DNA from: Schmidtea nova | Taxonomy: Eukaryota | Assembly: GCA_044892505.1 (NCBI GenBank) | Contig: CM097883.1 | Span: forward strand, 86,924,001-86,988,000 | Direction: 5' to 3' | Length of the DNA stretch: 64,000 bases | Shown: positions 15,812-56,826 of the stretch, piece after piece | Numbering within the stretch: position 1 is the first letter of the stretch | Layout: every line of letters starts with the position of its first letter | Notes under the pieces: generated by a model | What the model was told of the DNA's origin: nothing | Seen by the model: only the letters and a program-made list of their open reading frames with translations | The model's database searches: none | Program-made: the position numbers and the translations under genes

Positions 15812-16617
15812 GTCNNNNNNNNNNNNNNNNNNNNNNNNNNNNNNNNNNNNNNNNNNNNNNNNNNNNNNNNNNNNNNNNNNNNNNNNNNNNNNNNNNNNNN
15901 NNNNNNNNNNNNNNNNNNNNNNNNNNNNNNNNNNNNNNNNNNNNNNNNNNNNNNNNNNNNNNNNNNNNNNNNNNNNNNNNNNNNNNATTTTAAAATAATT
16001 GCAAAATGTTTGAGTAATTATTGGGAACGAGTAACTTGTGAGGGATTGTTGATTAAATATTTAAATCCAAAAATTAATGTTCAAGTTGCTCGTTCCACGA
16101 ATATTTTGAATGTGTTAAAGTAACTGAGTTGTGAATTTTGTTTTTGATATAATCACGTTTTTTTGAAAATATTTTTCATTTTTAATGTTTCTAAAAAAAT
16201 TTTTGTTTTTAATTTTGATAAAATTTAAAAATTTTTGTTTTATAAAACAAAATATTTTGTAAAATATTTTTATATATTAAATTAATTTGAAAATTTTATG
16301 TACAAAGATTTATTTTAAAAATTGAATTTTGATACAATTGGAGGATGATTATTATTGATTAATTTGTTTAAATATTTCGTATTTTATATCTATTATTGAT
16401 TATCCGGTTTGCTATTCTGAAGAAGACTGTTATTCGGTTATGTTGAATATANNNNNNNNNNNNNNNNNNNNNNNNNNNNNNNNNNNNNNNNNNNNNNNNN
16501 NNNNNNNNNNNNNNNNNNNNNNNNNNNNNNNNNNNNNNNNNNNNNNNNNNNNNNNNNNNNNNNNNNNNNNNNNNNNNNNNNNNNNNNNNNNNNNNNNNNN
16601 NNNNNNNNNNNNNNNNN

Positions 16618-17532: not shown

Positions 17533-18396
17533 NNNNNNNNNNNNNNNNNNNNNNNNNNNNNNNNNNNNNNNNNNNNNNNNNNNNNNNNNNNNNNNNNNNN
17601 NNNNNNNNNNNNNNNNNNNNNNNNNNNNNNNNNNNNNNNNNNNNNNNNNNNNNNNNNNNNNNNNNNNNNNNNNNNNNNNNNNNNNNNNNNNNNNNNNNNN
17701 NNNNNNNNNNNNNNNNNNNNNNNNNNNNNNNATCATGATCTACATTTTGTTTATTTTATTTATTTATTACTCAATTTTAAACCTATTTAATTGTAATGAA
17801 AACAATCAATCAAATTTTTTCTTTTAATAATCTAATAAAACTTTTTCTTAGAAAATTATATTAACTTTCTCAATCGCAGTGTCAAAGAAATTGATGGATT
17901 TAGAGAAAAAGTTCAATGATATATTAACTTCGTAAAAAACGAACAGTTCAATTTCCAAATATGTTATTTGCATGAATATAGGTACTTGAAATTCTATAGA
18001 TAATATCCGTTATTTTTCTAAAGGAAATTTTCCACAATTCATGAAATGATTTCTAATTTGCTCACTTTAGAAAAATTCCAATGAGTTCGTTTGCGATAAT
18101 TATCTAAATTCTATTCATAGTTTTCGAGTAAAGTTCTCTGAAATTTTCTCGGAAGATTTGTTTGTCGAGATAATTCTATCTCATCAAGTGAATGTCTGTG
18201 AAACTGAGTTTTAGAATATATTTGGCAAATGCTAGCAAATCTATTAATTTATTTTCATTTCATTTATAGATTTTTCATTTAGACTTATTTTTCAGATTAT
18301 TTTGGTTTAAATTTGTCATTTTCTTTAAATAAAAAAATAGTGTTAACAATAACTAAAAACAGTTAAATATATTTTAAAATAATAAATATATTTTAG

Positions 18397-19322
18397 TACA
18401 ATATTCCCCGGGCCATATCCCCCCGGACAATATCCCCTGGACAATATCCTCTGGACAACATCCCCTTGGACAATATCTCCTGGACAACACCCCCTTGAAC
18501 AATATCCATCCGGACAATATCCCCTGGACCATATCCCCCGGACAATATCCCCTGGACAATACCCCTTTAAACAATATCCCCTGGGCAATACCCCCTTTGG
18601 ACAATATCCCCTTTGGACCATATCCCTTTGGACAATATCCCCCGGACAATATCTCCTGGACAACATCCCCTTGGACAATTGCTTCTGGACAACACCCCCT
18701 TGGACAATATCCATCCGGACAATATCCCCTGGATCATATCCCCCGGACAATATCCCCTGGACAATACCCCTTTAAACAATATCCCCTTTGGACCATATCC
18801 CTTTGGACAATATCCACCCGGACAATATCCCCCGGACAATATCCCCTGGACAACATCCCCTTGAACAATATCTCTTGGACAATATCCCCTTTGGACCATA
18901 TCCCCCAGAAAACATCCATCCGGAAAATACCCCCTTGGACAATTTCTACCCTTGAAAATTCCCAACATCAATTAATTTAATATTAATTTAATTTAATATT
19001 AAAAATTCATTTATTGGTTTCGTTTGGGCATTGAGGGGTGAAATAAACTAAATATTGTAGTATCGTTTTTTGGTCATTGATGTTCGGAATTTTCCAAGGT
19101 GTAAATTGTCCAAAGGGGGTATTGTCCGAATGGATATTGTCCGGGGGGATATGGTCCGGGGGATATTGTCCGGGTGGATATTGTCCAAAGGGGGTATTGT
19201 CCGAATGGATATTGTCCGGGGGGATATGGTCCGGGGGATATTGTCCGGGTGGATATTGTCCAAAGGGGATATTGTTTAAAGGGGGTATTGTCCGAAAGGA
19301 TATTGTCCGGGGGAATATGTGT
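18397..19322. repeat. Foldback-like element: inverted arms built of a 14-16 bp GGACAATATCCCC(C/T) minisatellite
   Basis: The forward arm (18397-18970) ends ...cccttggacaatttctacccttgaaaattcccaacatca. The reverse arm (19078-19322) begins with its near complement tgatgttcggaattttccaaggtgtaaattgtccaaaggggg. An AT-rich spacer of about 105 bp separates them. Confidence 0.85.
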
Positions 19323-19684
19323 GTGTGGTTTTCATTGTTAATTGTTTCTTTATAACAATTAAATGTCAAATATTGTAAAGATTTAGGAATAATATAAATA
19401 AATTAAAAACGAAAATAATATTTTGAGTTGCCGGTTTTGTCAGAACTCCTTATATTTTAATAATTGTATTTAAATAAGTAGTATGGTTTTAAAATAAAAA
19501 TTCAAATCAAACAAGAATTCAATTAAGATACAAAGTTATTTGCTAAACAAAGTTATTTAAACAAAATTTTTCAGCAAATTTTTCATATTCCACAATCATT
19601 CAATATAATATAGCATTGATTAATTTATTTTGTATTAAAAATGATTTTATTTATAAAATATTTTAACTTTTATTTCTTTAAACT

Positions 19685-21275: not shown

Positions 21276-21692
21276 TCAACTTGTAAAGGTTATTTTAGTA
21301 GCTGCAAAATTAATTAATAAGACAAAAAAAAATATATTCAATAAAACAAATTGTTCTTTCTTAGCTGCAGGTATATCATCAGCTTTCACAGTTGAATTAA
21401 TCTTCTTTTTCTTCATGAAATAGCTGTCTTTAATGCGCTCTGGAATATCAATGGTAGAAATATCTATCTTTGTGCTTGTAGCAATAACTGGGGTGATTGA
21501 TTGTCTCATTCGCCTCTTGTGCTCACTGAATTCTTTCGTACGATTTGAGTTCTTTTTAATTGCAACATTCAATTGGTAACTTTGTGGTTTGCGTTGGGTT
21601 TTAATTTGTGCAGCTTCCATTTTTGTAAATTGCTTCTTGCTTGTCGTTTTTTGAATAAGGTGAAAAGTGCCATTTTTTTCTGATTTAAACAA
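21276..21692 (-). other. Unassigned 138-codon antisense ORF in intron 2 (possible exon of a nested gene)
   Basis: Open, hydrophilic K/S/T-rich frame, more GC-rich than its flanks, with a possible acceptor (ttgtttaaatcag) near 21680. No recognisable motif. Confidence 0.3.
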
Positions 21693-22535
21693 ATCGCATA
21701 TTTTTTTTATAAATAATTAAATACTTGATTTTAATATATAAATATTGATATTTAATTAAATAATATAATAACATATAATTATAACGGAGGCACTACAGTT
21801 ATGATCACTGAAATACTAAATTCTTTCCAAAAATAGATTTTTTTCTTTCAATTATTCTTTTAAATATAAAAATTGAAATTAATTTTAATTTTAATTTTTC
21901 CTTAAAACTATTTTTTAAAGCAAATTACATTTTGAGATCATATTTATTTACTATCATAAAAATAACTAATGTAAACATATGAATATGTTCTTTATAAATA
22001 CTTATAAAACAGTTTCCTTTTATTAAAATTTCACCTTTTACATTTTTGGATTTACTAATTTATTTTTCTTATGTGAAAAAATAGATTTTTTCTACAAATT
22101 TATTTCAATTCTTACTTAAGTTAATACATTGAGCCTTTCTTTTGTATTATTTTCCGTTTTTCATATTATTGTTGGTGTTGTTAAAATAAACAGAAAATAA
22201 ATGCAAAAGCACAAAAGCTATGTGCAAATCAATAAAAAAATACAAAATTGGGAAAATAATAATTAAAGTGCAAACATTAATTAAAATTTATAAAATTCAA
22301 AAATAAATATTTAACCTAGGAAACCTGGTATGTGATGATACTAAATGATAAGACGAATTCAAATATGGGTATATAATATTAAAAAGGAGCCCCAAAAAAG
22401 AAATATTAAGAAAATACAAATTAATTAAAATAATTAATTACCTTACAGGAAACCCGAGCCTATGGGAAGCTCAAGCGATGTGGAAAACCCGGGGTATCGA
22501 CACATCTATTAATTAGGAAAAGTTAATGGACTATT

Positions 22536-27879: not shown

Positions 27880-28850
27880 AGAAGTCAGAAAAATTTATAA
27901 AAATGACAAAAAAATATTTTTACCTTTAAATTCCTTTTATCAATGACCGGATTAATTTTATGATCATCAAAGAACATAATTTCATTGGTCTTCCAATTCG
28001 TTTGGCACATGTATCTAAGACATTGGGGCAAGCCTTGGCTAACAACCCAAGAAAAGAAAATACGTGTAAGATGGAAAATTGCTAAACACCAAAGAAAATA
28101 TGCTTTCGCAAGAACATTGTCTATAGCATCATGTGTTATAAATGCGAAGAAATTTACATTGGAAGCATCCTTCGGATTTAACATCGGAGAATTAAAGAAT
28201 ATCTTGATCCCGGTGGAAAGTCATCTGTATAAAGACATCTTCAACAATGTCAGACAGAAAATACGGAAAAATTAATATCAGTTAGAATATTGACAAGAGA
28301 AAACGAATAAAATAACTCTCAGACTTAAAGAAGCTATTCTCATTAGAGGAAAACATCCAAAAATAAAGTCTAAAGAGGAAGTTAACGAAAAAAACATTTT
28401 TGTTCTACAAAGAAAAAACAGAAAAAGGGAAAAACATAAATTACAGAACATATATGGACATTTCAAATTAGTTTTAAAATTTAAATATAAAGGGTTAGAA
28501 AATTGGAATATAGAAAACAAACTAAGCTAAAACAATTTTAAACTTTAGAAAGGATAATTTTTTGCGTTGAAATTGAGAAGATTTTTTAAAGAAGTATAAG
28601 ATTTATATTTATTCTTAAAAGATTTAATTTTTAATTATAAAGATTTTAAATTTATATTAATCAGATTTACATCCAATGAAAAAGGAGATAATTCACGAGA
28701 AAGAATCAGCAGAAATGGATGAAGATTCCAGTTATATTTCGAATTAAGGATTGATGAGGATTATTTTAAAATCGAAAATTTTCACTTAATATAAGATTTT
28801 GCAGCAAAGGCTAATTTTGTTATTTATTAATTATTTAATATTTAATGTTT
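27880..28850 (+). mobile_element. Degenerate Penelope-like element, family B, copy 2
   Basis: Colinear with 7391-8420 (IPFIND...GLPIRLAH...TCKMENC*TPKKICFRKNIVYSIMCYKCEEIYIG), with extra stops and the same 3' non-coding region. Confidence 0.85.
28743..28790 (+). ncRNA. Minimal hammerhead-like motif (PLE family B)
   Basis: attaagga-TTGATGA-G-GATT-attttaa-AATC-GAAA-ATTT-tcacttaat: bulged stem I, stem II, palindromic AAAATTTT in place of stem III, and U at core position 3. Confidence 0.5.
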
Positions 28851-42716: not shown

Positions 42717-42728
42717 TTATGACAATAA
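42717..42728 (+). repeat. Left target-site duplication TTATGACAATAA
   Basis: Identical to 54352-54363; its last 4 nt (ATAA) overlap element homology, which starts at 42725. Confidence 0.85.
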
Positions 42729-42758
42729 ATAAGAGAACACCATTTTTTAAAATATATT

Positions 42759-42802
42759 AATGCAATATATTTCGACAGCTTAGCTGTCATCATCAGGCTT
42801 TT
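42759..42802 (-). ncRNA. Minimal type I hammerhead ribozyme motif (left terminal partial unit)
   Basis: Minus strand: aaagc-CTGATGA-T-GACAGC-TAA-GCTGTC-GAAA-TATAT-T-gcatt. Confidence 0.65.
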
Positions 42803-42905
42803 CACAATCTCAATAAAATAAAAATTGATCTTAATTATACGCTTAATAGTGATTACATAATTACATGTGCATAATCCAATAAAACTTTTATTTACCCTAA
42901 TAAAA

Positions 42906-45503
42906 TTAATTAAACACTCTCAAAATGCATGTAGATATTGCATTTTGTATATTTATTTTAGGATTAAATGATTTTATCATCAAAGCCTCACAATTCACAC
43001 GTTCATAATAATTTTTAAATCCCCTAGAAAGTATTTTGAAATTAGAAATATCAATGCTCATCTTGCAAGTCTTATTATGCTCAATAATGTTACTCTTTCC
43101 GCTCTTTCTGGCATGTTCTTGAACTCGTGTACAGAGATGACGGGTAGTCTCTCCAATGTATGTGGCATTACACCCATTACAAGTAAAACGATATACGAGA
43201 TCAGAACACAGACCAAATGGCGTCACAGATTTATTACTGAACATGTCACGAACTTTGCAAGACTTAGAAATTATTTTAACATTTGTATTTCCAATATATT
43301 TTATAATAGATTTTTTAAAATTTACAAATCCCTCAGAAAACGGTAAAACTATAACAGAACCAATGCAATCATTCAAGTTACTTTTATTTATTTCATTATT
43401 ATTATTGCAATCAACACCATCATTCATTCCCATAACAACATCACCTGTTTCAATCAAAGGAGCACTATCAGATGTATTAAACGGATCAACACCAGGAGAA
43501 ATCTTTTCATCAATCACATTCAACTTATTAATACACTTATCAACAGTTTCACTCACCATTCGTTGCAAGAAACATTTTGAATATCCATTATTCTGTAGTA
43601 ATTTAATTAATTTATCAATACTATTTATAGATTTACAATAAGTTGACGGCAATGTCCAAGAACGATAAACCAATCCCCTTATCATATTTCTTTTATATTT
43701 AAAATCACAAAAGCTTTCCGGTGATGTATACAAACCAGTATCTGTTGTTTTCCTATAAATTTCGGTTTCAAAATGTTTCTCTTTCTTTTCAATCAACAAA
43801 TCAAGAAATGATATTTTAGAATTAATTTCTTCTTCAAAAGTAAATTTAATATTTTTATGCAAATCATTCATATAATACAAAAAAGGCTCAACATGTTCTT
43901 TATTCTTAAATACAAGAAAAATATCATCAACATAACGTTTATATACTAAGGGTTTATTCACACTACAATTTATAAATTTATTTTCTAAACTTGACATAAA
44001 AATAGATGCCAGTGTAGGAGCTAAAGGTGAGCCCATAGCAACACCATCAATTTGCTTATACCATTGATTATCAAAGATAAAATGGACATTAGAAGTAGCA
44101 AATGTCAAAAGTTTACGAAAAGCAACAACATCAATAATATTATGAAGTGAAGTGTTAACACTCCATAAATTGCAACAAATATCAATCGTTTCTATTAAAG
44201 GAACATTTGTAAAAAGGCTAACCACATCAAACGAAACCATAAAGTCATCATTCCCACTCTTATTTAAATTTACTATAAAAGAGGCAAACTCAAAGCTATC
44301 TTTACATTCATAATCAGTTTTAATCAAAGGTTTCAACAAACTATCTAAAAACTTCGCAACCTTATATTGTGAAGTTTGAATCATTGACAATACAGGTCTC
44401 ATAGGTAAATTATCTTTATGTACTTTTGGAAGACCATATAATTTAGCAGGTTGGGATCCCCGAGGCCAAAGTGAATTAACAATATCCTTATCTATATGTT
44501 TATTTAAAATTAAGTCATGAAGTAAAGATATTAATATTGTTTCATCTTTTAAAGGTGGTAATTTGCCATTCTTACGAAAACTGACAATCTTTTCAAATTG
44601 TGGAGATAACAATACCATTTCTAACTTTTTAATATAATCATCATGATTAAGAACGACCAAACCATTACCCTTATCAAATTTACATATATTAATATTTTTC
44701 TTCGATAAATTCTTTAAAGTATTAAAATCATTTATATTTTGTTTTTTATTCTTAGTTAAATAATCATTGGCGTTAACATTCAGTAAATTTTTTAAATAAT
44801 TCAAATTAATATTCTTATTTTTAGATAAAGTAAAAAACAAACATTCAATCTGGGAAAAAAATTTAAATTTGTCAATCCTATTTCTAATACCATGATTCGG
44901 ACCAAACTTCAAAATACGTTCCTCATCACTCGTCAATGGCACATCACTAACATTCAACACAGTATTCTTAACATTAAACGTACATACACCAAACAATTTT
45001 CTCAAATTTTTTAATTTTTTATTTTGACAATCAATTTTTAAACTTAAACAACGTTGTGAGTTTAAAATTACGGATTTAATGCACATGTAAAAATGAAAAT
45101 CACCAATCACCTCGTACAAGACCAATCTTACTACTGAAAGTTGCTTAACAAGATAATTTCTTCGCCTTTTCTCCAATTCCAAAATTCTTCTTAAAGTTCG
45201 TCGATGAATCATTCGAACGTCATCATCGAGTAGGCAATCATTCAATTTCATTTTAAAAATAAATGCTGGTATCATATGATCTTCCAAACACGTTTCTAAA
45301 AATGAAATATCTAATTCTTTTTTCCTCACAGATGTGTAAAGTTTTAAATATCTCTTGAATATTGGAACTGAAGTACAATCTAATCTAAATAAACTATTAA
45401 ATAAAAATGGCAATTTATTCATATAAATAAGAGAACACCATTTTTTAAAATATATTAATGCAATATATTTCGACAGCTTAGCTGTCATCATCAGGCTTTT
45501 CAC
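42906..45503 (-). CDS. Penelope-like RT + GIY-YIG polyprotein, unit 1 (intact)
   Basis: 865 aa. RT motifs KLYGLPKVHK..PMRPV, FDVVSLFTNVP, QIDGVAMGSPLAP, RYVDD; GIY-YIG LVYRFTCNGCNATYIGET...R..EH...H...E...N. The likely ATG is codon 28 (45422, MNKLP). Confidence 0.95.
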   Translation of the reverse strand: MKSLMMTAKLSKYIALIYFKKWCSLIYMNKLPFLFNSLFRLDCTSVPIFKRYLKLYTSVRKKELDISFLETCLEDHMIPAFIFKMKLNDCLLDDDVRMIHRRTLRRILELEKRRRNYLVKQLSVVRLVLYEVIGDFHFYMCIKSVILNSQRCLSLKIDCQNKKLKNLRKLFGVCTFNVKNTVLNVSDVPLTSDEERILKFGPNHGIRNRIDKFKFFSQIECLFFTLSKNKNINLNYLKNLLNVNANDYLTKNKKQNINDFNTLKNLSKKNINICKFDKGNGLVVLNHDDYIKKLEMVLLSPQFEKIVSFRKNGKLPPLKDETILISLLHDLILNKHIDKDIVNSLWPRGSQPAKLYGLPKVHKDNLPMRPVLSMIQTSQYKVAKFLDSLLKPLIKTDYECKDSFEFASFIVNLNKSGNDDFMVSFDVVSLFTNVPLIETIDICCNLWSVNTSLHNIIDVVAFRKLLTFATSNVHFIFDNQWYKQIDGVAMGSPLAPTLASIFMSSLENKFINCSVNKPLVYKRYVDDIFLVFKNKEHVEPFLYYMNDLHKNIKFTFEEEINSKISFLDLLIEKKEKHFETEIYRKTTDTGLYTSPESFCDFKYKRNMIRGLVYRSWTLPSTYCKSINSIDKLIKLLQNNGYSKCFLQRMVSETVDKCINKLNVIDEKISPGVDPFNTSDSAPLIETGDVVMGMNDGVDCNNNNEINKSNLNDCIGSVIVLPFSEGFVNFKKSIIKYIGNTNVKIISKSCKVRDMFSNKSVTPFGLCSDLVYRFTCNGCNATYIGETTRHLCTRVQEHARKSGKSNIIEHNKTCKMSIDISNFKILSRGFKNYYERVNCEALMIKSFNPKINIQNAISTCILRVFN
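45457..45500 (-). ncRNA. Minimal hammerhead motif at the 5' end of unit 1
   Basis: Same sequence as 42759-42802. Confidence 0.65.
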
Positions 45504-45603
45504 AATCTCAATAAAATAAAAATTGATCTTAATTATACGCTTAATAGTGATTACATAATTACATGTGCATAATCCAATAAAACTTTTATTTACCCTAATA
45601 AAA

Positions 45604-48201
45604 TTAATTAAACACTCTCAAAATGCATGTAGATATTGCATTTTGTATATTTATTTTAGGATTAAATGATTTTATCATCAAAGCCTCACAATTCACACGT
45701 TCATAATAATTTTTAAATCCCCTAGAAAGTATTTTGAAATTAGAAATATCAATGCTCATCTTGCAAGTCTTATTATGCTCAATAATGTTACTCTTTCCGC
45801 TCTTTCTGGCATGTTCTTGAACTCGTGTACAGAGATGAGGGGCAGTCTCTCCAATGTATGTGGCATTACACCCATTACAAGTAAAACGATATACGAGATC
45901 AGAACACAGACCAAATGGCGTCACAGATTTATTACTGAACATGTCACGAACTTTGCAAGACTTAGAAATTATTTTAACATTTGTATTTCCAATATATTTT
46001 ATAATAGATTTTTTAAAATTTACAAATCCCTCAGAAAACGGTAAAACTATAACAGAACCAATGCAATCATTCAAGTTACTTTTATTTATTTCATTGTTAT
46101 TATTGCAATCAACACCATCATTCATTCCCATAACAACATCACCTGTTTCAATCAAAGGAGCACTATCAGATGTATTAAACGGATCAACACCAGGAGAAAT
46201 CTTTTCATCAATCACATTCAACTTATTAATACACTTATCAACAGTTTCACTCACCATTCGTTGCAAGAAACATTTTGAATATCCATTATTCTGTAGTAAT
46301 TTAATTAATTTATCAATACTATTTATAGATTTACAATAAGTTGACGGCAATGTCCAAGAACGATAAACCAATCCCCTTATCATATTTCTTTTATATTTAA
46401 AATCACAAAAGCTTTCCGGTGATGTATACAAACCAGTATCTGTTGTTTTCCTATAAATTTCGGTTTCAAAATGTTTCTCTTTCTTTTCAATCAACAAATC
46501 AAGAAATGATATTTTAGAATTAATTTCTTCTTCAAAAGTAAATTTAATATTTTTATGCAAATCATTCATATAATACAAAAAAGGCTCAACATGTTCTTTA
46601 TTCTTAAATACAAGAAAAATATCATCAACATAACGTTTATATACTAAGGGTTTATTCACACTACAATTTATAAATTTATTTTCTAAACTTGACATAAAAA
46701 TAGATGCCAGTGTAGGAGCTAAAGGTGAGCCCATAGCAACACCATCAATTTGCTTATACCATTGATTATCAAAGATAAAATGGACATTAGAAGTAGCAAA
46801 TGTCAAAAGTTTACGAAAAGCAACAACATCAATAATATTATGAAGTGAAGTGTTAACACTCCATAAATTGCAACAAATATCAATCGTTTCTATTAAAGGA
46901 ACATTTGTAAAAAGGCTAACCACATCAAACGAAACCATAAAGTCATCATTCCCACTCTTATTTAAATTTACTATAAAAGAGGCAAACTCAAAGCTATCTT
47001 TACATTCATAATCAGTTTTAATCAAAGGTTTCAACAAACTATCTAAAAACTTCGCAACCTTATATTGTGAAGTTTGAATCATTGACAATACAGGTCTCAT
47101 AGGTAAATTATCTTTATGTACTTTTGGAAGACCATATAATTTAGCAGGTTGGGATCCCCGAGGCCAAAGTGAATTAACAATATCCTTATCTATATGTTTA
47201 TTTAAAATTAAGTCATGAAGTAAAGATATTAATATTGTTTCATCTTTTAAAGGTGGTAATTTGCCATTCTTACGAAAACTGACAATCTTTTCAAATTGTG
47301 GAGATAACAATACCATTTCTAACTTTTTAATATAATCATCATGATTAAGAACGACCAAACCATTACCCTTATCAAATTTACATATATTAATATTTTTCTT
47401 CGATAAATTCTTTAAAGTATTAAAATCATTTATATTTTGTTTTTTATTCTTAGTTAAATAATCATTGGCGTTAACATTCAGTAAATTTTTTAAATAATTC
47501 AAATTAATATTCTTATTTTTAGATAAAGTAAAAAACAAACATTCAATCTGGGAAAAAAATTTAAATTTGTCAATCCTATTTCTAATACCATGATTCGGAC
47601 CAAACTTCAAAATACGTTCCTCATCACTCGTCAATGGCACATCACTAACATTCAACACAGTATTCTTAACATTAAACGTACATACACCAAACAATTTTCT
47701 CAAATTTTTTAATTTTTTATTTTGACAATCAATTTTTGAACTTAAACAACGTTGTGAGTTTAAAATTACGGATTTAATGCACATGTAAAAATGAAAATCA
47801 CCAATCACCTCGTACAAGACCAATCTTACTACTGAAAGTTGCTTAACAAGATAATTTCTTCGCCTTTTCTCCAATTCCAAAATTCTTCTTAAAGTTCGTC
47901 GATGAATCATTCGAACGTCATCATCGAGTAGGCAATCATTCAATTTCATTTTAAAAATAAATGCTGGTATCATATGATCTTCCAAACACGTTTCTAAAAA
48001 TGAAATATCTAATTCTTTTTTCCTCACAGATGTGTAAAGTTTTAAATATCTCTTGAATATTGGAACTGAAGTACAATCTAATCTAAATAAACTATTAAAT
48101 AAAAATGGCAATTTATTCATATAAATAAGAGAACACCATTTTTTAAAATATATTAATGCAATATATTTCGACAGCTTAGCTGTCATCATCAGGCTTTTCA
48201 C
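45604..48201 (-). CDS. Penelope-like RT + GIY-YIG polyprotein, unit 2 (open; R-to-P change in ETARH)
   Basis: 865 aa, near-identical to unit 1; likely ATG at 48120. Confidence 0.95.
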   Translation of the reverse strand: MKSLMMTAKLSKYIALIYFKKWCSLIYMNKLPFLFNSLFRLDCTSVPIFKRYLKLYTSVRKKELDISFLETCLEDHMIPAFIFKMKLNDCLLDDDVRMIHRRTLRRILELEKRRRNYLVKQLSVVRLVLYEVIGDFHFYMCIKSVILNSQRCLSSKIDCQNKKLKNLRKLFGVCTFNVKNTVLNVSDVPLTSDEERILKFGPNHGIRNRIDKFKFFSQIECLFFTLSKNKNINLNYLKNLLNVNANDYLTKNKKQNINDFNTLKNLSKKNINICKFDKGNGLVVLNHDDYIKKLEMVLLSPQFEKIVSFRKNGKLPPLKDETILISLLHDLILNKHIDKDIVNSLWPRGSQPAKLYGLPKVHKDNLPMRPVLSMIQTSQYKVAKFLDSLLKPLIKTDYECKDSFEFASFIVNLNKSGNDDFMVSFDVVSLFTNVPLIETIDICCNLWSVNTSLHNIIDVVAFRKLLTFATSNVHFIFDNQWYKQIDGVAMGSPLAPTLASIFMSSLENKFINCSVNKPLVYKRYVDDIFLVFKNKEHVEPFLYYMNDLHKNIKFTFEEEINSKISFLDLLIEKKEKHFETEIYRKTTDTGLYTSPESFCDFKYKRNMIRGLVYRSWTLPSTYCKSINSIDKLIKLLQNNGYSKCFLQRMVSETVDKCINKLNVIDEKISPGVDPFNTSDSAPLIETGDVVMGMNDGVDCNNNNEINKSNLNDCIGSVIVLPFSEGFVNFKKSIIKYIGNTNVKIISKSCKVRDMFSNKSVTPFGLCSDLVYRFTCNGCNATYIGETAPHLCTRVQEHARKSGKSNIIEHNKTCKMSIDISNFKILSRGFKNYYERVNCEALMIKSFNPKINIQNAISTCILRVFN
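48155..48198 (-). ncRNA. Minimal hammerhead motif at the 5' end of unit 2
   Basis: Same sequence as 42759-42802. Confidence 0.65.
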
Positions 48202-48301
48202 AATCTCAATAAAATAAAAATTGATCTTAATTATACGCTTAATAGTGATTACATAATTACATGTGCATAATCCAATAAAACTTTTATTTACCCTAATAAA
48301 A

Positions 48302-50866
48302 TTAATTAAACACTCTCAAAATGCATGTAGATATTGCATTTTGTATATTTATTTTAGGATTAAATGATTTTATCATCAAAGCCTCACAATTCACACGTTC
48401 ATAATAATTTTTAAATCCCCTAGAAAGTATTTTGAAATTAGAAATATCAATGCTCATCTTGCAAGTCTTATTATGCTCAATAATGTTACTCTTTCCGCTC
48501 TTTCTGGCATGTTCTTGAACTCGTGTACAGAGATGACGGGCAGTCTCTCCAATGTATGTGGCATTACACCCATTACAAGTAAAACGATATACGAGATCAG
48601 AACACAGACCAAATGGCGTCACAGATTTATTACTGAACATGTCACGAACTTTGCAAGACTTAGAAATTATTTTAACATTTGTATTTCCAATATATTTTAT
48701 AATAGATTTTTTAAAATTTACAAATCCCTCAGAAAACGGTAAAACTATAACAGAACCAATGCAATCATTCAAGTTACTTTTATTTATTTCATTATTATTA
48801 TTATTGCAATCAACACCATCATTCATTCCCATAACAACATCACCTGTTTCAATCAAAGGAGCACTATCAGATGTATTAAACGGATCAACACCAGGAGAAA
48901 TCTTTTCATCAATCACATTCAACTTATTAATACACTTATCAACAGTTTCACTCACCATTCGTTGCAAGAAACATTTTGAATATCCATTATTCTGTAGTAA
49001 TTTAATTAATTTATCAATACTATTTATAGATTTACAATAAGTTGACGGCAATGTCCAAGAACGATAAACCAATCCCCTTATCATATTTCTTTTATATTTA
49101 AAATCACAAAAGCTTTCCGGTGATGTATACAAACCAGTATCTGTTGTTTTCCTATAAATTTCGGTTTCAAAATGTTTCTCTTTCTTTTCAATCAACAAAT
49201 CAAGAAATGATATTTTAGAATTAATTTCTTCTTCAAAAGTAAATTTAATATTTTTATGCAAATCATTCATATAATACAAAAAAGGCTCAACATGTTCTTT
49301 ATTCTTAAATACAAGAAAAATATCATCAACATAACGTTTATATACTAAGGGTTTATTCACACTACAATTTATAAATTTATTTTCTAAACTTGACATAAAA
49401 ATAGATGCCAGTGTAGGAGCTAAAGGTGAGCCCATAGCAACACCATCAATTTGCTTATACCATTGATTATCAAAGATAAAATGGACATTAGAAGTAGCAA
49501 ATGTCAAAAGTTTACGAAAAGCAACAACATCAATAATATTATGAAGTGAAGTGTTAACACTCCATAAATTGCAACAAATATCAATCGTTTCTATTAAAGG
49601 AACATTTGTAAAAAGGCTAACCACATCAAACGAAACCATAAAGTCATCATTCCCACTCTTATTTAAATTTACTATAAAAGAGGCAAACTCAAAGCTATCT
49701 TTACATTCATAATCAGTTTTAATCAAAGGTTTCAACAAACTATCTAAAAACTTCGCAACCTTATATTGTGAAGTTTGAATCATTGACAATACAGGTCTCA
49801 TAGGTAAATTATCTTTATGTACTTTTGGAAGACCATATAATTTAGCAGGTTGGGATCCCCGAGGCCAAAGTGAATTAACAATATCCTTATCTATATGTTT
49901 ATTTAAAATTAAGTCATGAAGTAAAGATATTAATATTGTTTCATCTTTTAAAGGTGGTAATTTGCCATTCTTACGAAAACTGACAATCTTTTCAAATTGT
50001 GGAGATAACAATACCATTTCTAACTTTTTAATATAATCATCATGATTAAGAACGACCAAACCATTACCCTTATCAAATTTACATATATTAATATTTTTCT
50101 TCGATAAATTCTTTAAAGTATTAAAATCATTTATATTTTATTTTTTATTCTTAGTTAAATAATCATTGGCGTTAACATTCAGTAAATTTTTTAAATAATT
50201 CAAATTAATATTCTTATTTTTAGATAAAGTAAAAAACAAACATTCAATCTGGGAAAAAAATTTAAATTTGTCAATCCTATTTCTAATACCATGATTCGGA
50301 CCAAACTTCAAAATACGTTCCTCATCACTCGTCAATGGCACATCACTAACATTCAACACAGTATTCTTAACATTAAACGTACATACACCAAACAATTTTC
50401 TCAAATTTTTTAATTTTTTATTTTGACAATCAATTTTTGAACTTAAACAACGTTGTGAGTTTAAAATTACGGATTTAATGCACATGTAAAAATGAAAATC
50501 ACCAATCACCTCGTACAAGACCAATCTTACTACTGAAAGTTGCTTAACAAGATAATTTCTTCGCCTTTTCTCCAATTCCAAAATTCTTCTTAAAGTTCGT
50601 CGATGAATCATTCGAACGTCATCATCGAGTAGGCAATCATTCAATTTCATTTTAAAAATAAATGCTGGTATCATATGATCTTCCAAACACGTTTCTAAAA
50701 ATGAAATATCTAATTCTTTTTTCCTCACAGATGTGTAAAGTTTTAAATATCTCTTGAATATTGGAACTGAAGTACAATCTAATCTAAATAAACTATTAAA
50801 TAAAAATGGCAATTTATTCATATAAATAAGAGAACACCATTTTTTAAAATATATTAATGCAATATA
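48302..50866 (-). pseudogene. Penelope-like unit 3: nonsense mutation, 5' end cut within the hammerhead
   Basis: CAA to TAA at 50138-50140 splits the ORF (50138..50869 and 48302..50059). Homology ends at 50866, inside the ATATAT of the hammerhead. Confidence 0.92.
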
Positions 50867-50869
50867 CAT

Positions 50870-51435
50870 ATGATAGTGCTCCTTTGATTGAAACAGGTGA
50901 TGTTGTTATGGGAATGAATGATGGTGTTGATTGCAATAATAATAATGAAATAAATAAAAGTAACTTGAATGATTGCATTGGTTCTGTTATAGTTTTACCG
51001 TTTTCTGAGGGATTTGTAAATTTTAAAAAATCTATTATAAAATATATTGGAAATACAAATGTTAAAATAATTTCTAAGTCTTGCAAAGTTCGTGACATGT
51101 TCAGTAATAAATCTGTGACGCCATTTGGTCTGTGTTCTGATCTCGTATATCGTTTTACTTGTAATGGGTGTAATGCCACATACATTGGAGAGACTGCCCG
51201 TCATCTCTGTACACGAGTTCAAGAACATGCCAGAAAGAGCGGAAAGAGTAACATTATTGAGCATAATAAGACTTGCAAGATGAGCATTGATATTTCTAAT
51301 TTCAAAATACTTTCTAGGGGATTTAAAAATTATTATGAACGTGTGAATTGTGAGGCTTTGATGATAAAATCATTTAATCCTAAAATAAATATACAAAATG
51401 CAATATCTACATGCATTTTGAGAGTGTTTAATTAA
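50870..51435 (+). pseudogene. Penelope-like unit 4: 3' fragment (linker + GIY-YIG), inverted
   Basis: Begins at DSAPLIETG and runs to the normal stop; fused head-to-head with unit 3. Confidence 0.92.
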
Positions 51436-51535
51436 TTTTATTAGGGTAAATAAAAGTTTTATTGGATTATGCACATGTAATTATGTAATCACTATTAAGC
51501 GTATAATTAAGATCAATTTTTATTTTATTGAGATT

Positions 51536-54136
51536 GTGAAAAGCCTGATGATGACAGCTAAGCTGTCGAAATATATTGCATTAATATATTTTAAAAAATG
51601 GTGTTCTCTTATTTATATGAATAAATTGCCATTTTTATTTAATAGTTTATTTAGATTAGATTGTACTTCAGTTCCAATATTCAAGAGATATTTAAAACTT
51701 TACACATCTGTGAGGAAAAAAGAATTAGATATTTCATTTTTAGAAACGTGTTTGGAAGATCATATGATACCAGCATTTATTTTTAAAATGAAATTGAATG
51801 ATTGCCTACTCGATGATGACGTTCGAATGATTCATCGACGAACTTTAAGAAGAATTTTGGAATTGGAGAAAAGGCGAAGAAATTATCTTGTTAAGCAACT
51901 TTCAGTAGTAAGATTGGTCTTGTACGAGGTGATTGGTGATTTTCATTTTTACATGTGCATTAAATCCGTAATTTTAAACTCACAACGTTGTTTAAGTTCA
52001 AAAATTGATTGTCAAAATAAAAAATTAAAAAATTTGAGAAAATTGTTTGGTGTATGTACGTTTAATGTTAAGAATACTGTGTTGAATGTTAGTGATGTGC
52101 CATTGACGAGTGATGAGGAACGTATTTTGAAGTTTGGTCCGAATCATGGTATTAGAAATAGGATTGACAAATTTAAATTTTTTTCCCAGATTGAATGTTT
52201 GTTTTTTACTTTGTCTAAAAATAAGAATATTAATTTGAATTATTTAAAAAATTTACTGAATGTTAACGCCAATGATTATTTAACTAAGAATAAAAAACAA
52301 AATATAAATGATTTTAATACTTTAAAGAATTTATCGAAGAAAAATATTAATATATGTAAATTTGATAAGGGTAATGGTTTGGTCGTTCTTAATCATGATG
52401 ATTATATTAAAAAGTTAGAAATGGTATTGTTATCTCCACAATTTGAAAAGATTGTCAGTTTTCGTAAGAATGGCAAATTACCACCTTTAAAAGATGAAAC
52501 AATATTAATATCTTTACTTCATGACTTAATTTTAAATAAACATATAGATAAGGATATTGTTAATTCACTTTGGCCTCGGGGATCCCAACCTGCTAAATTA
52601 TATGGTCTTCCAAAAGTACATAAAGATAATTTACCTATGAGACCTGTATTGTCAATGATTCAAACTTCACAATATAAGGTTGCGAAGTTTTTAGATAGTT
52701 TGTTGAAACCTTTGATTAAAACTGATTATGAATGTAAAGATAGCTTTGAGTTTGCCTCTTTTATAGTAAATTTAAATAAGAGTGGGAATGATGACTTTAT
52801 GGTTTCGTTTGATGTGGTTAGCCTTTTTACAAATGTTCCTTTAATAGAAACGATTGATATTTGTTGCAATTTATGGAGTGTTAACACTTCACTTCATAAT
52901 ATTATTGATGTTGTTGCTTTTCGTAAACTTTTGACATTTGCTACTTCTAATGTCCATTTTATCTTTGATAATCAATGGTATAAGCAAATTGATGGTGTTG
53001 CTATGGGCTCACCTTTAGCTCCTACACTGGCATCTATTTTTATGTCAAGTTTAGAAAATAAATTTATAAATTGTAGTGTGAATAAACCCTTAGTATATAA
53101 ACGTTATGTTGATGATATTTTTCTTGTATTTAAGAATAAAGAACATGTTGAGCCTTTTTTGTATTATATGAATGATTTGCATAAAAATATTAAATTTACT
53201 TTTGAAGAAGAAATTAATTCTAAAATATCATTTCTTGATTTGTTGATTGAAAAGAAAGAGAAACATTTTGAAACCGAAATTTATAGGAAAACAACAGATA
53301 CTGGTTTGTATACATCACCGGAAAGCTTTTGTGATTTTAAATATAAAAGAAATATGATAAGGGGATTGGTTTATCGTTCTTGGACATTGCCGTCAACTTA
53401 TTGTAAATCTATAAATAGTATTGATAAATTAATTAAATTACTACAGAATAATGGATATTCAAAATGTTTCTTGCAACGAATGGTGAGTGAAACTGTTGAT
53501 AAGTGTATTAATAAGTTGAATGTGATTGATGAAAAGATTTCTCCTGGTGTTGATCCGTTTAATACATCTGATAGTGCTCCTTTGATTGAAACAGGTGATG
53601 TTGTTATGGGAATGAATGATGGTGTTGATTGCAATAATAATAATAATGAAATAAATAAAAGTAACTTGAATGATTGCATTGGTTCTGTTATAGTTTTACC
53701 GTTTTCTGAGGGATTTGTAAATTTTAAAAAATCTATTATAAAATATATTGGAAATACAAATGTTAAAATAATTTCTAAGTCTTGCAAAGTTCGTGACATG
53801 TTCAGTAATAAATCTGTGACGCCATTTGGTCTGTGTTCTGATCTCGTATATCGTTTTACTTGTAATGGGTGTAATGCCACATACATTGGAGAGACTGCCC
53901 GTCATCTCTGTACACGAGTTCAAGAACATGCCAGAAAGAGCGGAAAGAGTAACATTATTGAGCATAATAAGACTTGCAAGATGAGCATTGATATTTCTAA
54001 TTTCAAAATACTTTCTAGGGGATTTAAAAATTATTATGAACGTGTGAATTGTGAGGCTTTGATGATAAAATCATTTAATCCTAAAATAAATATACAAAAT
54101 GCAATATCTACATGCATTTTGAGAGTGTTTAATTAA
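51536..54136 (+). CDS. Penelope-like RT + GIY-YIG polyprotein, unit 5 (intact)
   Basis: 866 aa (one extra Asn) with all RT and endonuclease motifs; likely ATG at 51617. Confidence 0.95.
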   Translation: MKSLMMTAKLSKYIALIYFKKWCSLIYMNKLPFLFNSLFRLDCTSVPIFKRYLKLYTSVRKKELDISFLETCLEDHMIPAFIFKMKLNDCLLDDDVRMIHRRTLRRILELEKRRRNYLVKQLSVVRLVLYEVIGDFHFYMCIKSVILNSQRCLSSKIDCQNKKLKNLRKLFGVCTFNVKNTVLNVSDVPLTSDEERILKFGPNHGIRNRIDKFKFFSQIECLFFTLSKNKNINLNYLKNLLNVNANDYLTKNKKQNINDFNTLKNLSKKNINICKFDKGNGLVVLNHDDYIKKLEMVLLSPQFEKIVSFRKNGKLPPLKDETILISLLHDLILNKHIDKDIVNSLWPRGSQPAKLYGLPKVHKDNLPMRPVLSMIQTSQYKVAKFLDSLLKPLIKTDYECKDSFEFASFIVNLNKSGNDDFMVSFDVVSLFTNVPLIETIDICCNLWSVNTSLHNIIDVVAFRKLLTFATSNVHFIFDNQWYKQIDGVAMGSPLAPTLASIFMSSLENKFINCSVNKPLVYKRYVDDIFLVFKNKEHVEPFLYYMNDLHKNIKFTFEEEINSKISFLDLLIEKKEKHFETEIYRKTTDTGLYTSPESFCDFKYKRNMIRGLVYRSWTLPSTYCKSINSIDKLIKLLQNNGYSKCFLQRMVSETVDKCINKLNVIDEKISPGVDPFNTSDSAPLIETGDVVMGMNDGVDCNNNNNEINKSNLNDCIGSVIVLPFSEGFVNFKKSIIKYIGNTNVKIISKSCKVRDMFSNKSVTPFGLCSDLVYRFTCNGCNATYIGETARHLCTRVQEHARKSGKSNIIEHNKTCKMSIDISNFKILSRGFKNYYERVNCEALMIKSFNPKINIQNAISTCILRVFN
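51539..51582 (+). ncRNA. Minimal hammerhead motif at the 5' end of unit 5
   Basis: CTGATGA 51545-51; stem II GACAGC/GCTGTC 51553-67; GAAA 51568-71; palindromic ATATAT 51571-76; predicted cleavage after 51577; short stem I. Confidence 0.65.
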
Positions 54137-54239
54137 TTTTATTAGGGTAAATAAAAGTTTTATTGGATTATGCACATGTAATTATGTAATCACTATTAAG
54201 CGTATAATTAAGATCAATTTTTATTTTATTGAGATTGTG

Positions 54240-54283
54240 AAAAGCCTGATGATGACAGCTAAGCTGTCGAAATATATTGCATT
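54240..54283 (+). ncRNA. Minimal hammerhead motif (right terminal partial unit)
   Basis: Same sequence; CTGATGA at 54246. Confidence 0.65.
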
Positions 54284-54351
54284 AATATATTTTAAAAAAT
54301 GGTGTTCTCTTATTTATATGAATAAATTGCCATTTTTATTTAATAGTTTAT

Positions 54352-54363
54352 TTATGACAATAA
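54352..54363 (+). repeat. Right target-site duplication TTATGACAATAA
   Basis: Identical to 42717-42728; its first 3 nt (TTA) overlap element homology, which ends at 54354. Confidence 0.85.
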
Positions 54364-56286: not shown

Positions 56287-56826
56287 CAAAGCCACCTTAT
56301 CCAATAGGCACCATAGGCACCGTGCCTATGGCCTACGAACTTTAAGGGGGCCTACGAAGAAAAAATAAAATACATACATATATATACAAAGAAAAACAAA
56401 ATAATTTTAGTTAAAAAAAATTAAAAAACGAAAATAAATAATTTCAAATATAAAAACGGAACTGAAAAATTTTAAATAATAATTTATTTTCGCCATTTTT
56501 CTTTGACAAAATCTTCAATAATGTCGTCAAAATTCATATCACGAGTAAGATTACTCTCAATGATGAGAGGCGATCTTGATTCATAGTTGACCGAATATAA
56601 TTTTTTATATGCTTCAATTTGGAAAATGATCGTTCTCCTTCTGCATTTGCTCCAATAATAGAGAGATAAATTCGAAATGCAATATTTACATTTGGAAAAC
56701 TTGTCTGTAATTTGTCTTGAATTTGTGATTTTATTAAATCTGCTACAGATTTTGGTGTACTAATTTGTTTTTCATTATTTATATTGTAATGTGCCTAGGG
56801 CCTACGAAAGGTTTGAGACGGCTCTG
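56287..56826 (-). mobile_element. hAT internal-deletion derivative with the transposase dimerisation domain
   Basis: Perfect 8 bp TSD GCCCAAGG (56279-86, 56827-34); ends CAAAGCC / GGCTCTG. Minus strand FPNVNIAFRIYLS.../EGERSFSKLKHIKNYIRSTMNQDRLS is the hAT C-terminal motif. Confidence 0.9.

What the first reader, a model, noticed from the sequence alone, without database searches (positions are those of the whole stretch)
42717..54363. 11.6 kb bidirectional Penelope concatemer inside a single 12 bp target-site duplication
Seen: three exact head-to-tail 2698 bp units on the minus strand, a central head-to-head junction, then a fragment, a full unit and a partial unit on the plus strand. TTATGACAATAA flanks both extremes, and there is no host DNA between units. 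Established: PLEs form partial tandems (pseudo-LTRs) and often carry an inverted 5' segment, usually around one ORF. Inference: one integration event copied more than four units from a multimeric or circular RNA, giving three open RT-endonuclease ORFs in one locus. It could be a young, self-perpetuating source array.
Basis: partly seen in the sequence, partly recalled or inferred. Interest (0 to 1): 0.9.

Follow-up and report, generated by a model that had tools for sequence, protein, structure and literature searches.

The report
Two-armed multi-copy Penelope retrotransposon insertion
An 11.6 kb block of about 4.3 near-identical copies of a Penelope-like retrotransposon, in two arms that face each other inside one 12-bp target duplication; it is a large, very young example of a known insertion architecture, not a new kind of element.

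Summary
Window 42729-54351 (11,623 bp) is tiled without host DNA. On the minus strand lie units of 2678, 2698 and 2701 bp plus 61 bp. On the plus strand lie 769 bp, a 2701-bp unit and 18 bp. The 12-mer TTATGACAATAA flanks both ends and occurs nowhere else in the window. The units are 99.8-99.9% alike, not exact.

Each unit encodes a reverse transcriptase with a C-terminal GIY-YIG endonuclease. Its start codon lies inside a hammerhead-ribozyme motif whose helices covary in relatives. The "partial unit" at the right end is the canonical Penelope "tail": the two arms stop at two start sites about 38 nt apart.

Both arms have their 3' ends outward, next to the duplication. They meet at an asymmetric 3-nt microhomology. 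This fits one insertion in which both nicked strands primed cDNA on multi-unit RNA, as shown in vitro for an anole Penelope-like element (PMC11167929). Six of seven relatives' loci show the same head-to-head layout, but with at most 2.5 units.

Three ORFs are intact. The single-event reading is supported. A circular RNA template and "source array" status are untested. This is a new member of a known kind, of modest interest.

The parts
42717..42728 (.). Left copy of the 12-bp target-site duplication TTATGACAATAA
   Evidence: One of only two occurrences in the window. Its last 4 nt (ATAA) also match the element, which is a microhomology.
42729..45406 (-). Unit A, the 3'-most unit of the minus-sense arm (2678 bp). 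It ends at reverse-transcription start site S1.
   Evidence: It has 2 private substitutions.
45407..48104 (-). Unit B, a full 2698-bp unit, used as the reference
   Evidence: It has 2 private substitutions.
48105..50805 (-). Unit C, a full 2701-bp unit with the (AAT)5 allele
50806..50866 (-). First 61 nt (3'-proximal in element sense) of a fourth unit. This is the 5' end of the minus-sense arm. It stops directly 3' of the hammerhead core.
50864..50866 (.). Head-to-head junction: 3-nt microhomology ATA shared by both arms
   Evidence: The two blastn hits overlap here; sequence shown. The junction is asymmetric: unit position 61 meets unit position 769, and the nearest mirrored arms lie 705 nt apart (I1).
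50864..51632 (+). 769-nt 5'-truncated unit fragment F, the 5' end of the plus-sense arm
   Evidence: It has 1 private substitution and the (AAT)4 allele.
51633..54333 (+). Unit E, a full 2701-bp unit with the (AAT)5 allele
54314..54351 (+). 'Tail': a 38-nt extension (34-41 nt, depending on how the microhomologies are assigned) by which the plus arm runs past start site S1 to start site S2
   Evidence: the last 18 nt are identical to the unit ends. The same one-sided 29-31 nt tail is seen in relatives L002, L005, L006 and L007.
54352..54363 (.). Right copy of the 12-bp target-site duplication
   Evidence: Its first 3 nt also match the element.
42906..45491 (-). Intact ORF, 861 aa from the ATG. 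RT domain about 43833-44402; GIY-YIG endonuclease about 42942-43199.
45604..48189 (-). Intact ORF, 861 aa
48302..50866 (-). Broken ORF copy: the start is lost to the 5' truncation at the junction, and there is one internal stop
   Evidence: counts only.
51548..54136 (+). Intact ORF, 862 aa
50864..51435 (+). C-terminal ORF fragment (189 codons plus stop) in the truncated unit F
42770..42796 (-). Hammerhead-ribozyme core motif, copy 1 (core, helix II, GAAA). The ORF start codon lies inside it.
45468..45494 (-). Hammerhead core motif, copy 2
48166..48192 (-). Hammerhead core motif, copy 3
51545..51571 (+). Hammerhead core motif, copy 4
54246..54272 (+). Hammerhead core motif, copy 5

Best explanation
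This is one recent insertion of an endonuclease-bearing Penelope-like retrotransposon (PLE) with a 2.7-kb unit.

Proposed steps:
1. The element's endonuclease nicked both strands of the target 12 bp apart, each nick just after ATAA.
2. Each freed 3' end primed reverse transcription on multi-unit element RNA. Priming was at one of two internal start sites that lie about 45 nt (S1) and about 83 nt (S2) downstream of the hammerhead core.
3. The top-strand cDNA, started at S1, ran 8.1 kb (3.02 units). The bottom-strand cDNA, started at S2, ran 3.5 kb (1.29 units, so it carries the 38-nt 'tail').
4. The two cDNA ends paired at a 3-nt microhomology and were completed and sealed.

The result is two arms with their 3' ends outward inside a 12-bp duplication.

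The template was most likely a linear read-through transcript of a tandem source array with slightly different units.

Shown by the sequence: the tiling, the ends, the duplication, the microhomologies, the tail, the intact ORFs and the ribozyme motif. Inferred: the order of events and the enzymology (taken from in vitro work on another PLE), and the nature of the template.
For: Identity:
- Pfam RVT_1 hit at 8e-12; the GIY-YIG hit is weak.
- The endonuclease region aligns to the Pfam-positive endonuclease of relative P0017.
- 1398 homologues, most carrying the domain set RVT_1, HTH_animal and DUF8422.
- YVDD, DKG and YIGET motifs are present in all three intact ORFs.
- A hammerhead motif occurs once per unit end: 5 hits against 0.04 expected.
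- In six family members, 90% of cells pair against 32-43% in slid controls; 11 of 15 pairs show compensatory changes; 0 of 500 shuffles reach this.

Single event:
- The 12-mer is unique to the two extremes.
- There is no host DNA inside.
- Both arms have their 3' ends at the duplication.

Two primed strands:
- The arms end at two different unit positions 34-41 nt apart. This matches the two RT start sites and the 'tail' in PMC11167929, where the protein cleaved and extended both strands.
- There is 4-nt and 3-nt microhomology at the two priming sites, and ATA at the junction.
- The junction is asymmetric, not a palindrome.

All units of one age: 7 substitutions, all private, none shared.

Linear heterogeneous template: the (AAT) alleles run 4,4,5 along one arm and 5,4 along the other. 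No slippage is needed if both cDNAs copied an RNA with units 5'-4,5,4,4-3', the second cDNA starting at an inner unit.

Relatives: L002, L003, L005, L006, L007 and L009 show head-to-head arms. L002, L005, L006 and L007 carry a one-sided tail of 29-31 nt.

Literature describing this architecture: PMC8557442, PMC3846280.
Against: - No reads, alleles or RNA data are available, so unit number, single-step origin and template type are not directly shown.
- The in vitro study reported priming without homology to the target. Here 3-4 nt of homology are seen, which may be chance in AT-rich DNA.
- The (AAT) argument rests on one microsatellite. Gene conversion between the neighbouring inverted units C and E could mimic it.
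- No other copy of this exact family was found, so no source array is known.
- The relatives examined have at most 2.5 units, so a template of more than 3 units is unusual.
Confidence: 0.55

Rival explanations
1. Same single two-strand-primed insertion, but the template was a hammerhead-processed, circularised unit-length RNA copied round and round (rolling-circle reverse transcription).
For: - The start sites lie 40-80 nt downstream of the predicted ribozyme cut. A linear cut monomer could therefore not template a full unit, but a circle could (geometry is inference).
- Unit junctions are seamless and identical in all copies.
- All substitutions are private, as expected from one uniform template plus copying errors.
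- The hypothesis is published (PMC4209133). Retrozymes with related ribozymes do form circles (PMC7229834 abstract).
Against: - Each arm is heterogeneous for (AAT)4 and (AAT)5 within one cDNA. This needs at least two identical slippage events on a circle, against none on a heterogeneous linear RNA.
- In vitro, ribozyme mutants did not affect insertion, and unprocessed RNA was the main substrate (PMC11167929).
- No RNA data exist for this element.
Confidence: 0.2
2. An ordinary smaller PLE insertion (inverted fragment plus one to two units) later grew by unequal crossing-over or replication slippage between its tandem units.
For: - 2.7-kb units at 99.9% identity are good substrates for unequal exchange (general knowledge).
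- The relatives examined have at most 2.5 units.
- Units A and B share the 4-repeat length.
Against: - No substitution is shared by any subset of units. The tree is star-like, which needs all duplications to precede every substitution.
- A and B, the candidates for the newest duplicates, carry more private changes (2 each) than C, E and F (1 each).
- The power of both arguments is low, with only 7 sites.
Confidence: 0.13
3. The unit number or the inversion is an assembly or fold-back read artefact.
For: Tandem and inverted PLE structures are known to trouble assemblies (PMC8557442, PMC3846280). Identity between units is very high.
Against: - The junction is not a palindrome: unit position 61 meets position 769, and 705 nt separate the nearest mirrored arms.
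- The two outer ends differ by the canonical tail and are flanked by different host DNA with a clean 12-bp duplication.
- The units carry distinct private variants, so they were not collapsed or copied from one consensus.
- There is no N run within 5 kb of the left end or 3 kb of the right end.
- The same layout is seen in six independent relatives' loci.
Confidence: 0.07
4. Two independent insertions: a plus-sense copy landed later at the 5' end of an older minus-sense array.
For: PLE endonucleases can nick their own repeats (scenario in PMC11167929).
Against: - The second insertion would need its own duplication, and none is present at the inner junction.
- Its outer end would have to fall exactly between the first array and that array's right-hand duplication copy.
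- Both arms are equally young.
Confidence: 0.03

Closest known systems
Canonical endonuclease-positive Penelope-like elements (Penelope/Poseidon type; for example Pen2a of Adineta vaga in PMC3846280 and PAc of Anolis in PMC11167929)
   Same: [quoted passage not shown]
- The ORF start lies in the repeat, at a hammerhead ribozyme.
- Partial tandems (pseudo-LTRs), a head-to-head inverted 5'-truncated copy, a 30-40 nt tail at one end only, and a short target duplication.
- Two internal RT start sites.
- A short asparagine (AAT) run between RT and EN, as in A. vaga families.
   Different: - More units: 3.02 + 1.29 here, against the usual 1.x plus a short inverted repeat.
- Only 65% or less protein identity to anything in the databases searched.
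- Duplication of 12 bp, against 8-10 bp in A. vaga.
- 3-4 nt homology between the nicked target and the start sites.
- Clade placement not tested by phylogeny.
Twin priming of human L1 (inversion/truncation insertions)
   Same: Both strands of a staggered target cut prime cDNA. The two cDNAs join at a microhomology, which gives an inverted 5' segment inside one target duplication. This rests on my own knowledge of the L1 literature, not on a paper read here.
   Different: In L1 the second primer anneals inside the same single-unit RNA, so the inverted piece is internal sequence. Here both cDNAs begin at the element's dedicated start sites and each runs through more than one unit. The enzyme family is also different (GIY-YIG rather than APE).
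Retrozymes and hammerhead circular RNAs (PMC7229834; bioRxiv 10.64898/2026.07.22.740005)
   Same: Tandem units, each carrying a type-I hammerhead with a short palindromic helix III. They are thought to be mobilised by PLE enzymes and to spread through multimeric or circular RNA.
   Different: Retrozymes are short and non-coding. This element is autonomous, with a 2.6-kb ORF. No circular RNA has been shown for it.

Membership tests
Penelope-like elements (EN+) | Reverse transcriptase of the PLE/telomerase-like group | tested here: met
   RVT_1 hit at 7.7e-12. YVDD and DKG motifs are present. 1398 homologues, most carrying RVT_1, HTH_animal and DUF8422. No phylogeny with named references was made.
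Penelope-like elements (EN+) | GIY-YIG endonuclease fused at the C-terminus | tested here: met
   The Pfam GIY-YIG hit is weak (E 0.0075, below the cut-off). The region aligns at 4e-11 to the Pfam-positive endonuclease of P0017, with the (V/L)VY, YIG, R, EH and N positions shared.
Penelope-like elements (EN+) | Partial tandem copies (pseudo-LTRs), with the ORF start in the upstream repeat | tested here: met
   Head-to-tail units without spacer. The ATG lies 65 nt upstream of start site S1, so a copy needs more than one unit to keep its start.
Penelope-like elements (EN+) | Inverted 5'-truncated copy joined head-to-head | tested here: met
   The same layout is seen in 6 of 7 relatives' loci.
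Penelope-like elements (EN+) | 30-40 nt 'tail' at one end only | tested here: met
   38 nt (34-41) on the plus arm only. Tails of 29-31 nt in L002, L005, L006 and L007.
Penelope-like elements (EN+) | Hammerhead ribozyme motif in the repeat | tested here: met
   Motif present once per unit end, with covariation in helices I, II and the palindromic helix III across six sequences. No Rfam model reaches threshold, as expected for minimal PLE hammerheads (PMC4209133). Self-cleavage cannot be tested here.
Penelope-like elements (EN+) | Short target-site duplication | tested here: met
   12 bp, present only at the two ends.
Penelope/Poseidon clade as opposed to Neptune, Nematis or Hydra | CCHH-type Cys/His residues in the endonuclease, no CX2-5CxxC linker upstream, DKG rather than DKT (criteria from PMC8557442) | tested here: inconclusive
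   By eye in the translation: CxxC lies between GIY and YIG, with His/Cys after it; DKG is present; no CX2-5CxxC lies upstream. There is no reference alignment or tree, so the clade call is a lead only.
Hydra clade of PLEs | DKT motif, no CCHH, insertion into (TA)n | tested here: not met
   DKG is present, Cys/His residues are present, and the target is not a microsatellite.
Rolling-circle copy of a circular hammerhead RNA | Circular unit-length RNA exists and serves as template | not testable with these tools
   No RNA data. The only indirect evidence is the (AAT) allele order, which argues weakly against it.
Fold-back assembly artefact | Perfect palindrome about the turning point | tested here: not met
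   Unit position 61 abuts unit position 769, and there is a 705-nt unmirrored centre.

The most novel reading that the evidence does not exclude
The locus may be a genomic footprint of rolling-circle reverse transcription of a hammerhead-processed circular Penelope RNA. On this reading the two-site (S1/S2) priming on opposite strands, seen in 5 of the 6 loci whose ends I could read, reflects a fixed geometry of a dimeric enzyme rather than an optional 'tail'. The stop of the long cDNA 3-6 nt from the predicted ribozyme cut would then mark a processed or ribozyme-folded template.
Probability: 0.15. Interest if true: 0.6.

Novelty: new member of a known kind. Interest (0 to 1): 0.3.

Why it matters
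How Penelope-like elements build their tandem and inverted insertions is still only partly understood. The first in vitro data (2024) showed nicking and extension of both strands and two internal start sites.

This locus is a clean, very young in vivo example that shows all of those features at once:
- a readable 12-bp duplication, which most relatives hide inside (TA)n repeats;
- both nick sites;
- both start sites, with their microhomologies;
- the junction of the two cDNAs;
- cDNAs that each run through more than one unit.

It is useful as a worked example and for annotation, because such blocks are easily mis-assembled or mis-called as LTR elements. It does not change the current picture.

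Tried and rejected
- Rfam at E up to 1 on 17 kb, at E up to 10 on 161 nt, and at gathering score on the whole window gave no hammerhead or other real RNA family. The ribozyme was found by motif and covariation instead.
- A PDB sequence search gave no hit.
- The exact protein is not on record anywhere. An exact 27-mer of the ribozyme is absent from the metagenome contigs. No second copy of the family was therefore found, and no empty site.
- The host organism was not identified. Cluster look-up of the closest relatives gave no organism names; the only named relatives are a coral protein and a liver-fluke protein at about 30% identity. The window is about 26% G+C and rich in transposon debris.
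- The flanks of the insertion have no Pfam hit and no repeat elsewhere in the window, so the target looks like unique non-coding DNA.
- The bacterial-type promoter and terminator scan is uninformative for a eukaryote. A TATA-like box and an AATAAA in the 100-nt spacer are pattern matches only.
- Hydra-clade membership was considered and rejected (DKG present, Cys/His present, no (TA)n target).
- I did not scan the viral contig collection, so as not to fetch animal virus sequence.
Full report
**Observation**

I used the unit at 45407-48104 as the reference for a blastn search against the window. The search tiles 42725-54354 without a gap. In window order the pieces are:
- unit A (42729-45406, reference positions 21-2698);
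- unit B (45407-48104, the reference);
- unit C (48105-50805, 2701 bp);
- 61 nt of a fourth unit (50806-50866);
- in the opposite orientation, a 769-nt fragment F (50864-51632);
- a full 2701-bp unit E (51633-54333);
- 18 more nt (54334-54351).

The repeat finder gives the same picture. The 12-mer TTATGACAATAA occurs only at 42717-42728 and 54352-54363. At the window's base composition a given 12-nt match has a probability of about 7e-7. The block is therefore 11,623 bp of element sequence with no host DNA inside. No N run lies between 37226 and 57393.

The units are not exact copies. There are 7 substitutions, every one private to a single unit (A 2, B 2, C 1, E 1, F 1). There is also one repeat-length difference: (AAT)5 in C and E against four repeats in A, B and F.

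**What the unit is**

The long ORF gives a Pfam RVT_1 hit (about 8e-12) and a weak GIY-YIG hit near the C-terminus. That C-terminal region aligns at 4e-11 with the Pfam-positive endonuclease of relative P0017. The motifs YVDD, DKG and YIGET are present in all three intact copies.

A protein search found 1398 homologues, and most of the best hits carry RVT_1, HTH_animal and DUF8422. The best is only 65% identical, and the exact protein is on record nowhere. No solved structure matches by sequence.

The start codon sits inside a hammerhead-like core: CUGAUGA, one unpaired U, a 6-bp helix, then GAAA followed by the palindrome AUAUAU. The generic form of this core rests on my own knowledge. The motif occurs once per unit end, with 5 hits against 0.04 expected. 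Rfam does not detect it. That is usual for the minimal, dimer-type hammerheads of these elements (PMC4209133).

I tested the fold on six distinct family members, the window plus five sequences from four relatives' loci:
- 90% of cells pair, against 32-43% when the partners are slid;
- 11 of 15 pairs show changes on both sides;
- none of 500 shuffles reaches this.

I drew the structure from these same sequences, which inflates the contrast somewhat. The compensatory changes in helices I and II, and in the palindrome (AUAUAU against ACAUGU), are nevertheless plain.

The element is therefore an endonuclease-positive Penelope-like element (PLE). By motifs it looks like the Penelope/Poseidon type: DKG is present, Cys/His residues lie in the endonuclease, and there is no upstream CxxC linker (criteria from PMC8557442). 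I made no tree, so the clade is a lead only.

**The ends**

In element sense, both arms have their 3' ends outward, directly next to the duplication.
- The minus arm stops about 45 nt after the GAAA of the ribozyme. I call this start site S1. Its last 4 nt are shared with the duplication.
- The plus arm runs 38 nt further, to start site S2. The range is 34-41 nt, depending on how the shared bases are assigned. Its last 3 nt are shared with the duplication.
- Those extra bases are identical to the unit sequence.

This is the PLE "tail". It is described as a 30-40 bp extension usually present at only one end (PMC8557442), and as 31 bp in Adineta vaga, where duplications are 8-10 bp (PMC3846280). 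It has been explained in vitro by two adjacent internal start sites of reverse transcription (PMC11167929).

From the geometry, the two priming 3' ends were the top strand ending in the duplication and the bottom strand ending in its complement. Both end in ATAA, so both nicks followed ATAA, 12 bp apart.

**The centre**

The arms meet at 50864-50866, where ATA is shared by both. Unit position 61 abuts unit position 769, and the nearest mirrored arms are 705 nt apart. The junction is therefore not a palindrome. That argues against a fold-back read or assembly artefact. It also argues against the snap-back self-priming model, which expects palindromes at the turn (PMC3846280). It fits two separate cDNAs annealing at a microhomology.

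**Genes**

Counted from the ATG, the ORFs of units A and B (861 aa) and unit E (862 aa) are intact. They differ by 1-3 residues and one Asn. The ORF copy in unit C has lost its start, because the arm ends 61 nt into the next unit, and it has one internal stop. F carries only a 189-codon C-terminal piece.

The ATG lies 65 nt upstream of S1. A copy therefore keeps a complete gene only if it extends beyond one unit. This is the known reason why these elements need more-than-unit copies (PMC4209133, citing Evgen'ev and Arkhipova 2005).

**Relatives**

I fetched eight loci through homologous proteins at roughly 32-37% protein identity. One of them, L003, lies at a contig end. Six loci show the same head-to-head layout:

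| Locus | Layout (units) |
|---|---|
| L002 | 0.33 + 2.2 (unit 2599 bp) |
| L003 | at a contig end |
| L005 | 1.1 + 0.84 |
| L006 | 0.6 + 1.0 |
| L007 | 0.9 + 0.9 |
| L009 | 0.2 + 0.95 |
| L008 | single truncated copy |

In L002, L005, L006 and L007 one arm stops at S1 and the other at S2, with a tail of 29-31 nt. All four lie in (TA)n repeats, which hide any duplication. In L009 both arms stop at the same place. The window's copy is thus the largest of this small sample (4.3 units against at most 2.5). It is also the only one with a readable duplication.

**Mechanism**

The best-supported account is a single insertion in which both nicked strands primed cDNA synthesis on multi-unit element RNA. 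One cDNA started at S1 and ran 8.1 kb. The other started at S2 and ran 3.5 kb. They joined at ATA.

This is what the anole element's protein does in vitro: it cleaves and extends both strands, uses two internal start sites, and uses unprocessed multi-copy RNA as its main substrate (PMC11167929). It works like L1 twin priming (my own knowledge of that literature).

The sequence shows the anatomy. The order of steps and the enzymology are inferred.

One difference from the in vitro report is 3-4 nt of homology between each primer end and its start site. In DNA this AT-rich, that may be chance.

**The template**

The predicted ribozyme cut lies upstream of S1 and S2. A cut linear monomer could therefore not template a whole unit. 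The template was either a multi-unit RNA or a circle.

Within each arm the (AAT) alleles differ: 4,4,5 from the 3' end of the minus arm, and 5,4 on the plus arm. A single linear RNA with units 5'-4,5,4,4-3' explains both arms with no slippage, if the second cDNA began at an inner unit. A uniform circle needs at least two identical slippage events.

This favours a heterogeneous linear transcript, but only weakly. Gene conversion between the neighbouring inverted units C and E could give the same pattern.

One oddity remains. The long arm ends 3-6 nt upstream of the predicted cut and directly 3' of the ribozyme core. A chance hit within 6 nt is about 0.5% per unit, but this was noticed after the fact, and L002 and L005 do not show it (notebook).

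**Rivals**
- Growth by unequal exchange cannot be excluded. However, no substitution is shared by any subset of units, so all units look the same age.
- An assembly artefact is made unlikely by the asymmetric centre, the different ends, the private variants and the recurrence of the layout in independent relatives. Only reads can settle the unit number.
- Two separate insertions would need a second duplication, and none is present.

**Verdict**

The single-event reading is supported. "More than four units copied" should read "two cDNAs of 3.0 and 1.3 units". The right-hand "partial unit" is the canonical tail. The circular template and the "source array" role are untested. The architecture and the circular-RNA idea are both already published. 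This is a new, unusually large and clean member of a known kind.

**Context**

The host organism is unknown. The window is about 26% G+C and full of transposon remains.

- I left the entry in place and do not repeat the lengths here.
- Early in my reasoning I also worked with the ORF bounds that one search lists.
- The L6 stretch was sent to no tool. The generic core was used as a search pattern in my scripts.
- The consensus line printed was not used.

Noticed in passing
window 7544-7867 (+), 15989-16117 (+), 28086-28298 (+): Remains of other, divergent Penelope-like elements. All three are C-terminal endonuclease pieces. The first has a Pfam GIY-YIG hit at 4.6e-7. The second is 58% identical to the array's C-terminus and abuts an N run. 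They match at 33%, 58% and 30% identity to the array's ORF.
   Followed up: partly
window 50858-50866: The 5' end of the long arm lies 3-6 nt upstream of the predicted hammerhead cleavage site and directly 3' of the ribozyme core. This could reflect stalling at the folded ribozyme or a processed template end. It is a single case and was noticed after the fact.
   Followed up: partly
window 42725-42728 and 54352-54354: Both inferred primer ends finish in ATAA, so both nicks follow ATAA. Each shares 4 or 3 nt with the RNA at its start site. The in vitro study of another PLE reported no such homology.
   Followed up: partly
window 43156-43641 (+), 45854-46339 (+), 48552-49040 (+), 53398-53886 (-): Each unit has a 161-162 aa ATG-started ORF antisense to the endonuclease-proximal part of the main ORF. 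This is long for DNA so AT-rich. I tested neither domains nor conservation.
   Followed up: no
window 56537-56794 (-): Remnant of a hAT transposase C-terminal dimerisation domain (Pfam 9e-8), 2.2 kb to the right of the array.
   Followed up: partly
window 21279-21716 (-): ORF with a short ribosomal protein L6e match (Pfam 1.8e-7, about 46 residues). It could be an exon or a processed pseudogene fragment.
   Followed up: partly
window 18340-19400: A block of higher G+C (32%) with open frames on both strands and in several phases, and repetitive peptide-like translations. It looks like a satellite or minisatellite rather than a gene.
   Followed up: no
L002 8560-8680 and 15280-15310; L005 7000-7175 and 12040-12120; L006 and L007 ends: The more distant relatives sit in (TA)n microsatellites, so their duplications cannot be read. 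The window's family inserted into unique AT-rich DNA. In L007 a second PLE copy abuts the first in the same microsatellite.
   Followed up: partly
L002 1-4741: An unrelated direct repeat of about 2047 nt with a 2691-nt period (100% identity) lies upstream of the PLE in this relative's contig. Its nature is unknown.
   Followed up: no
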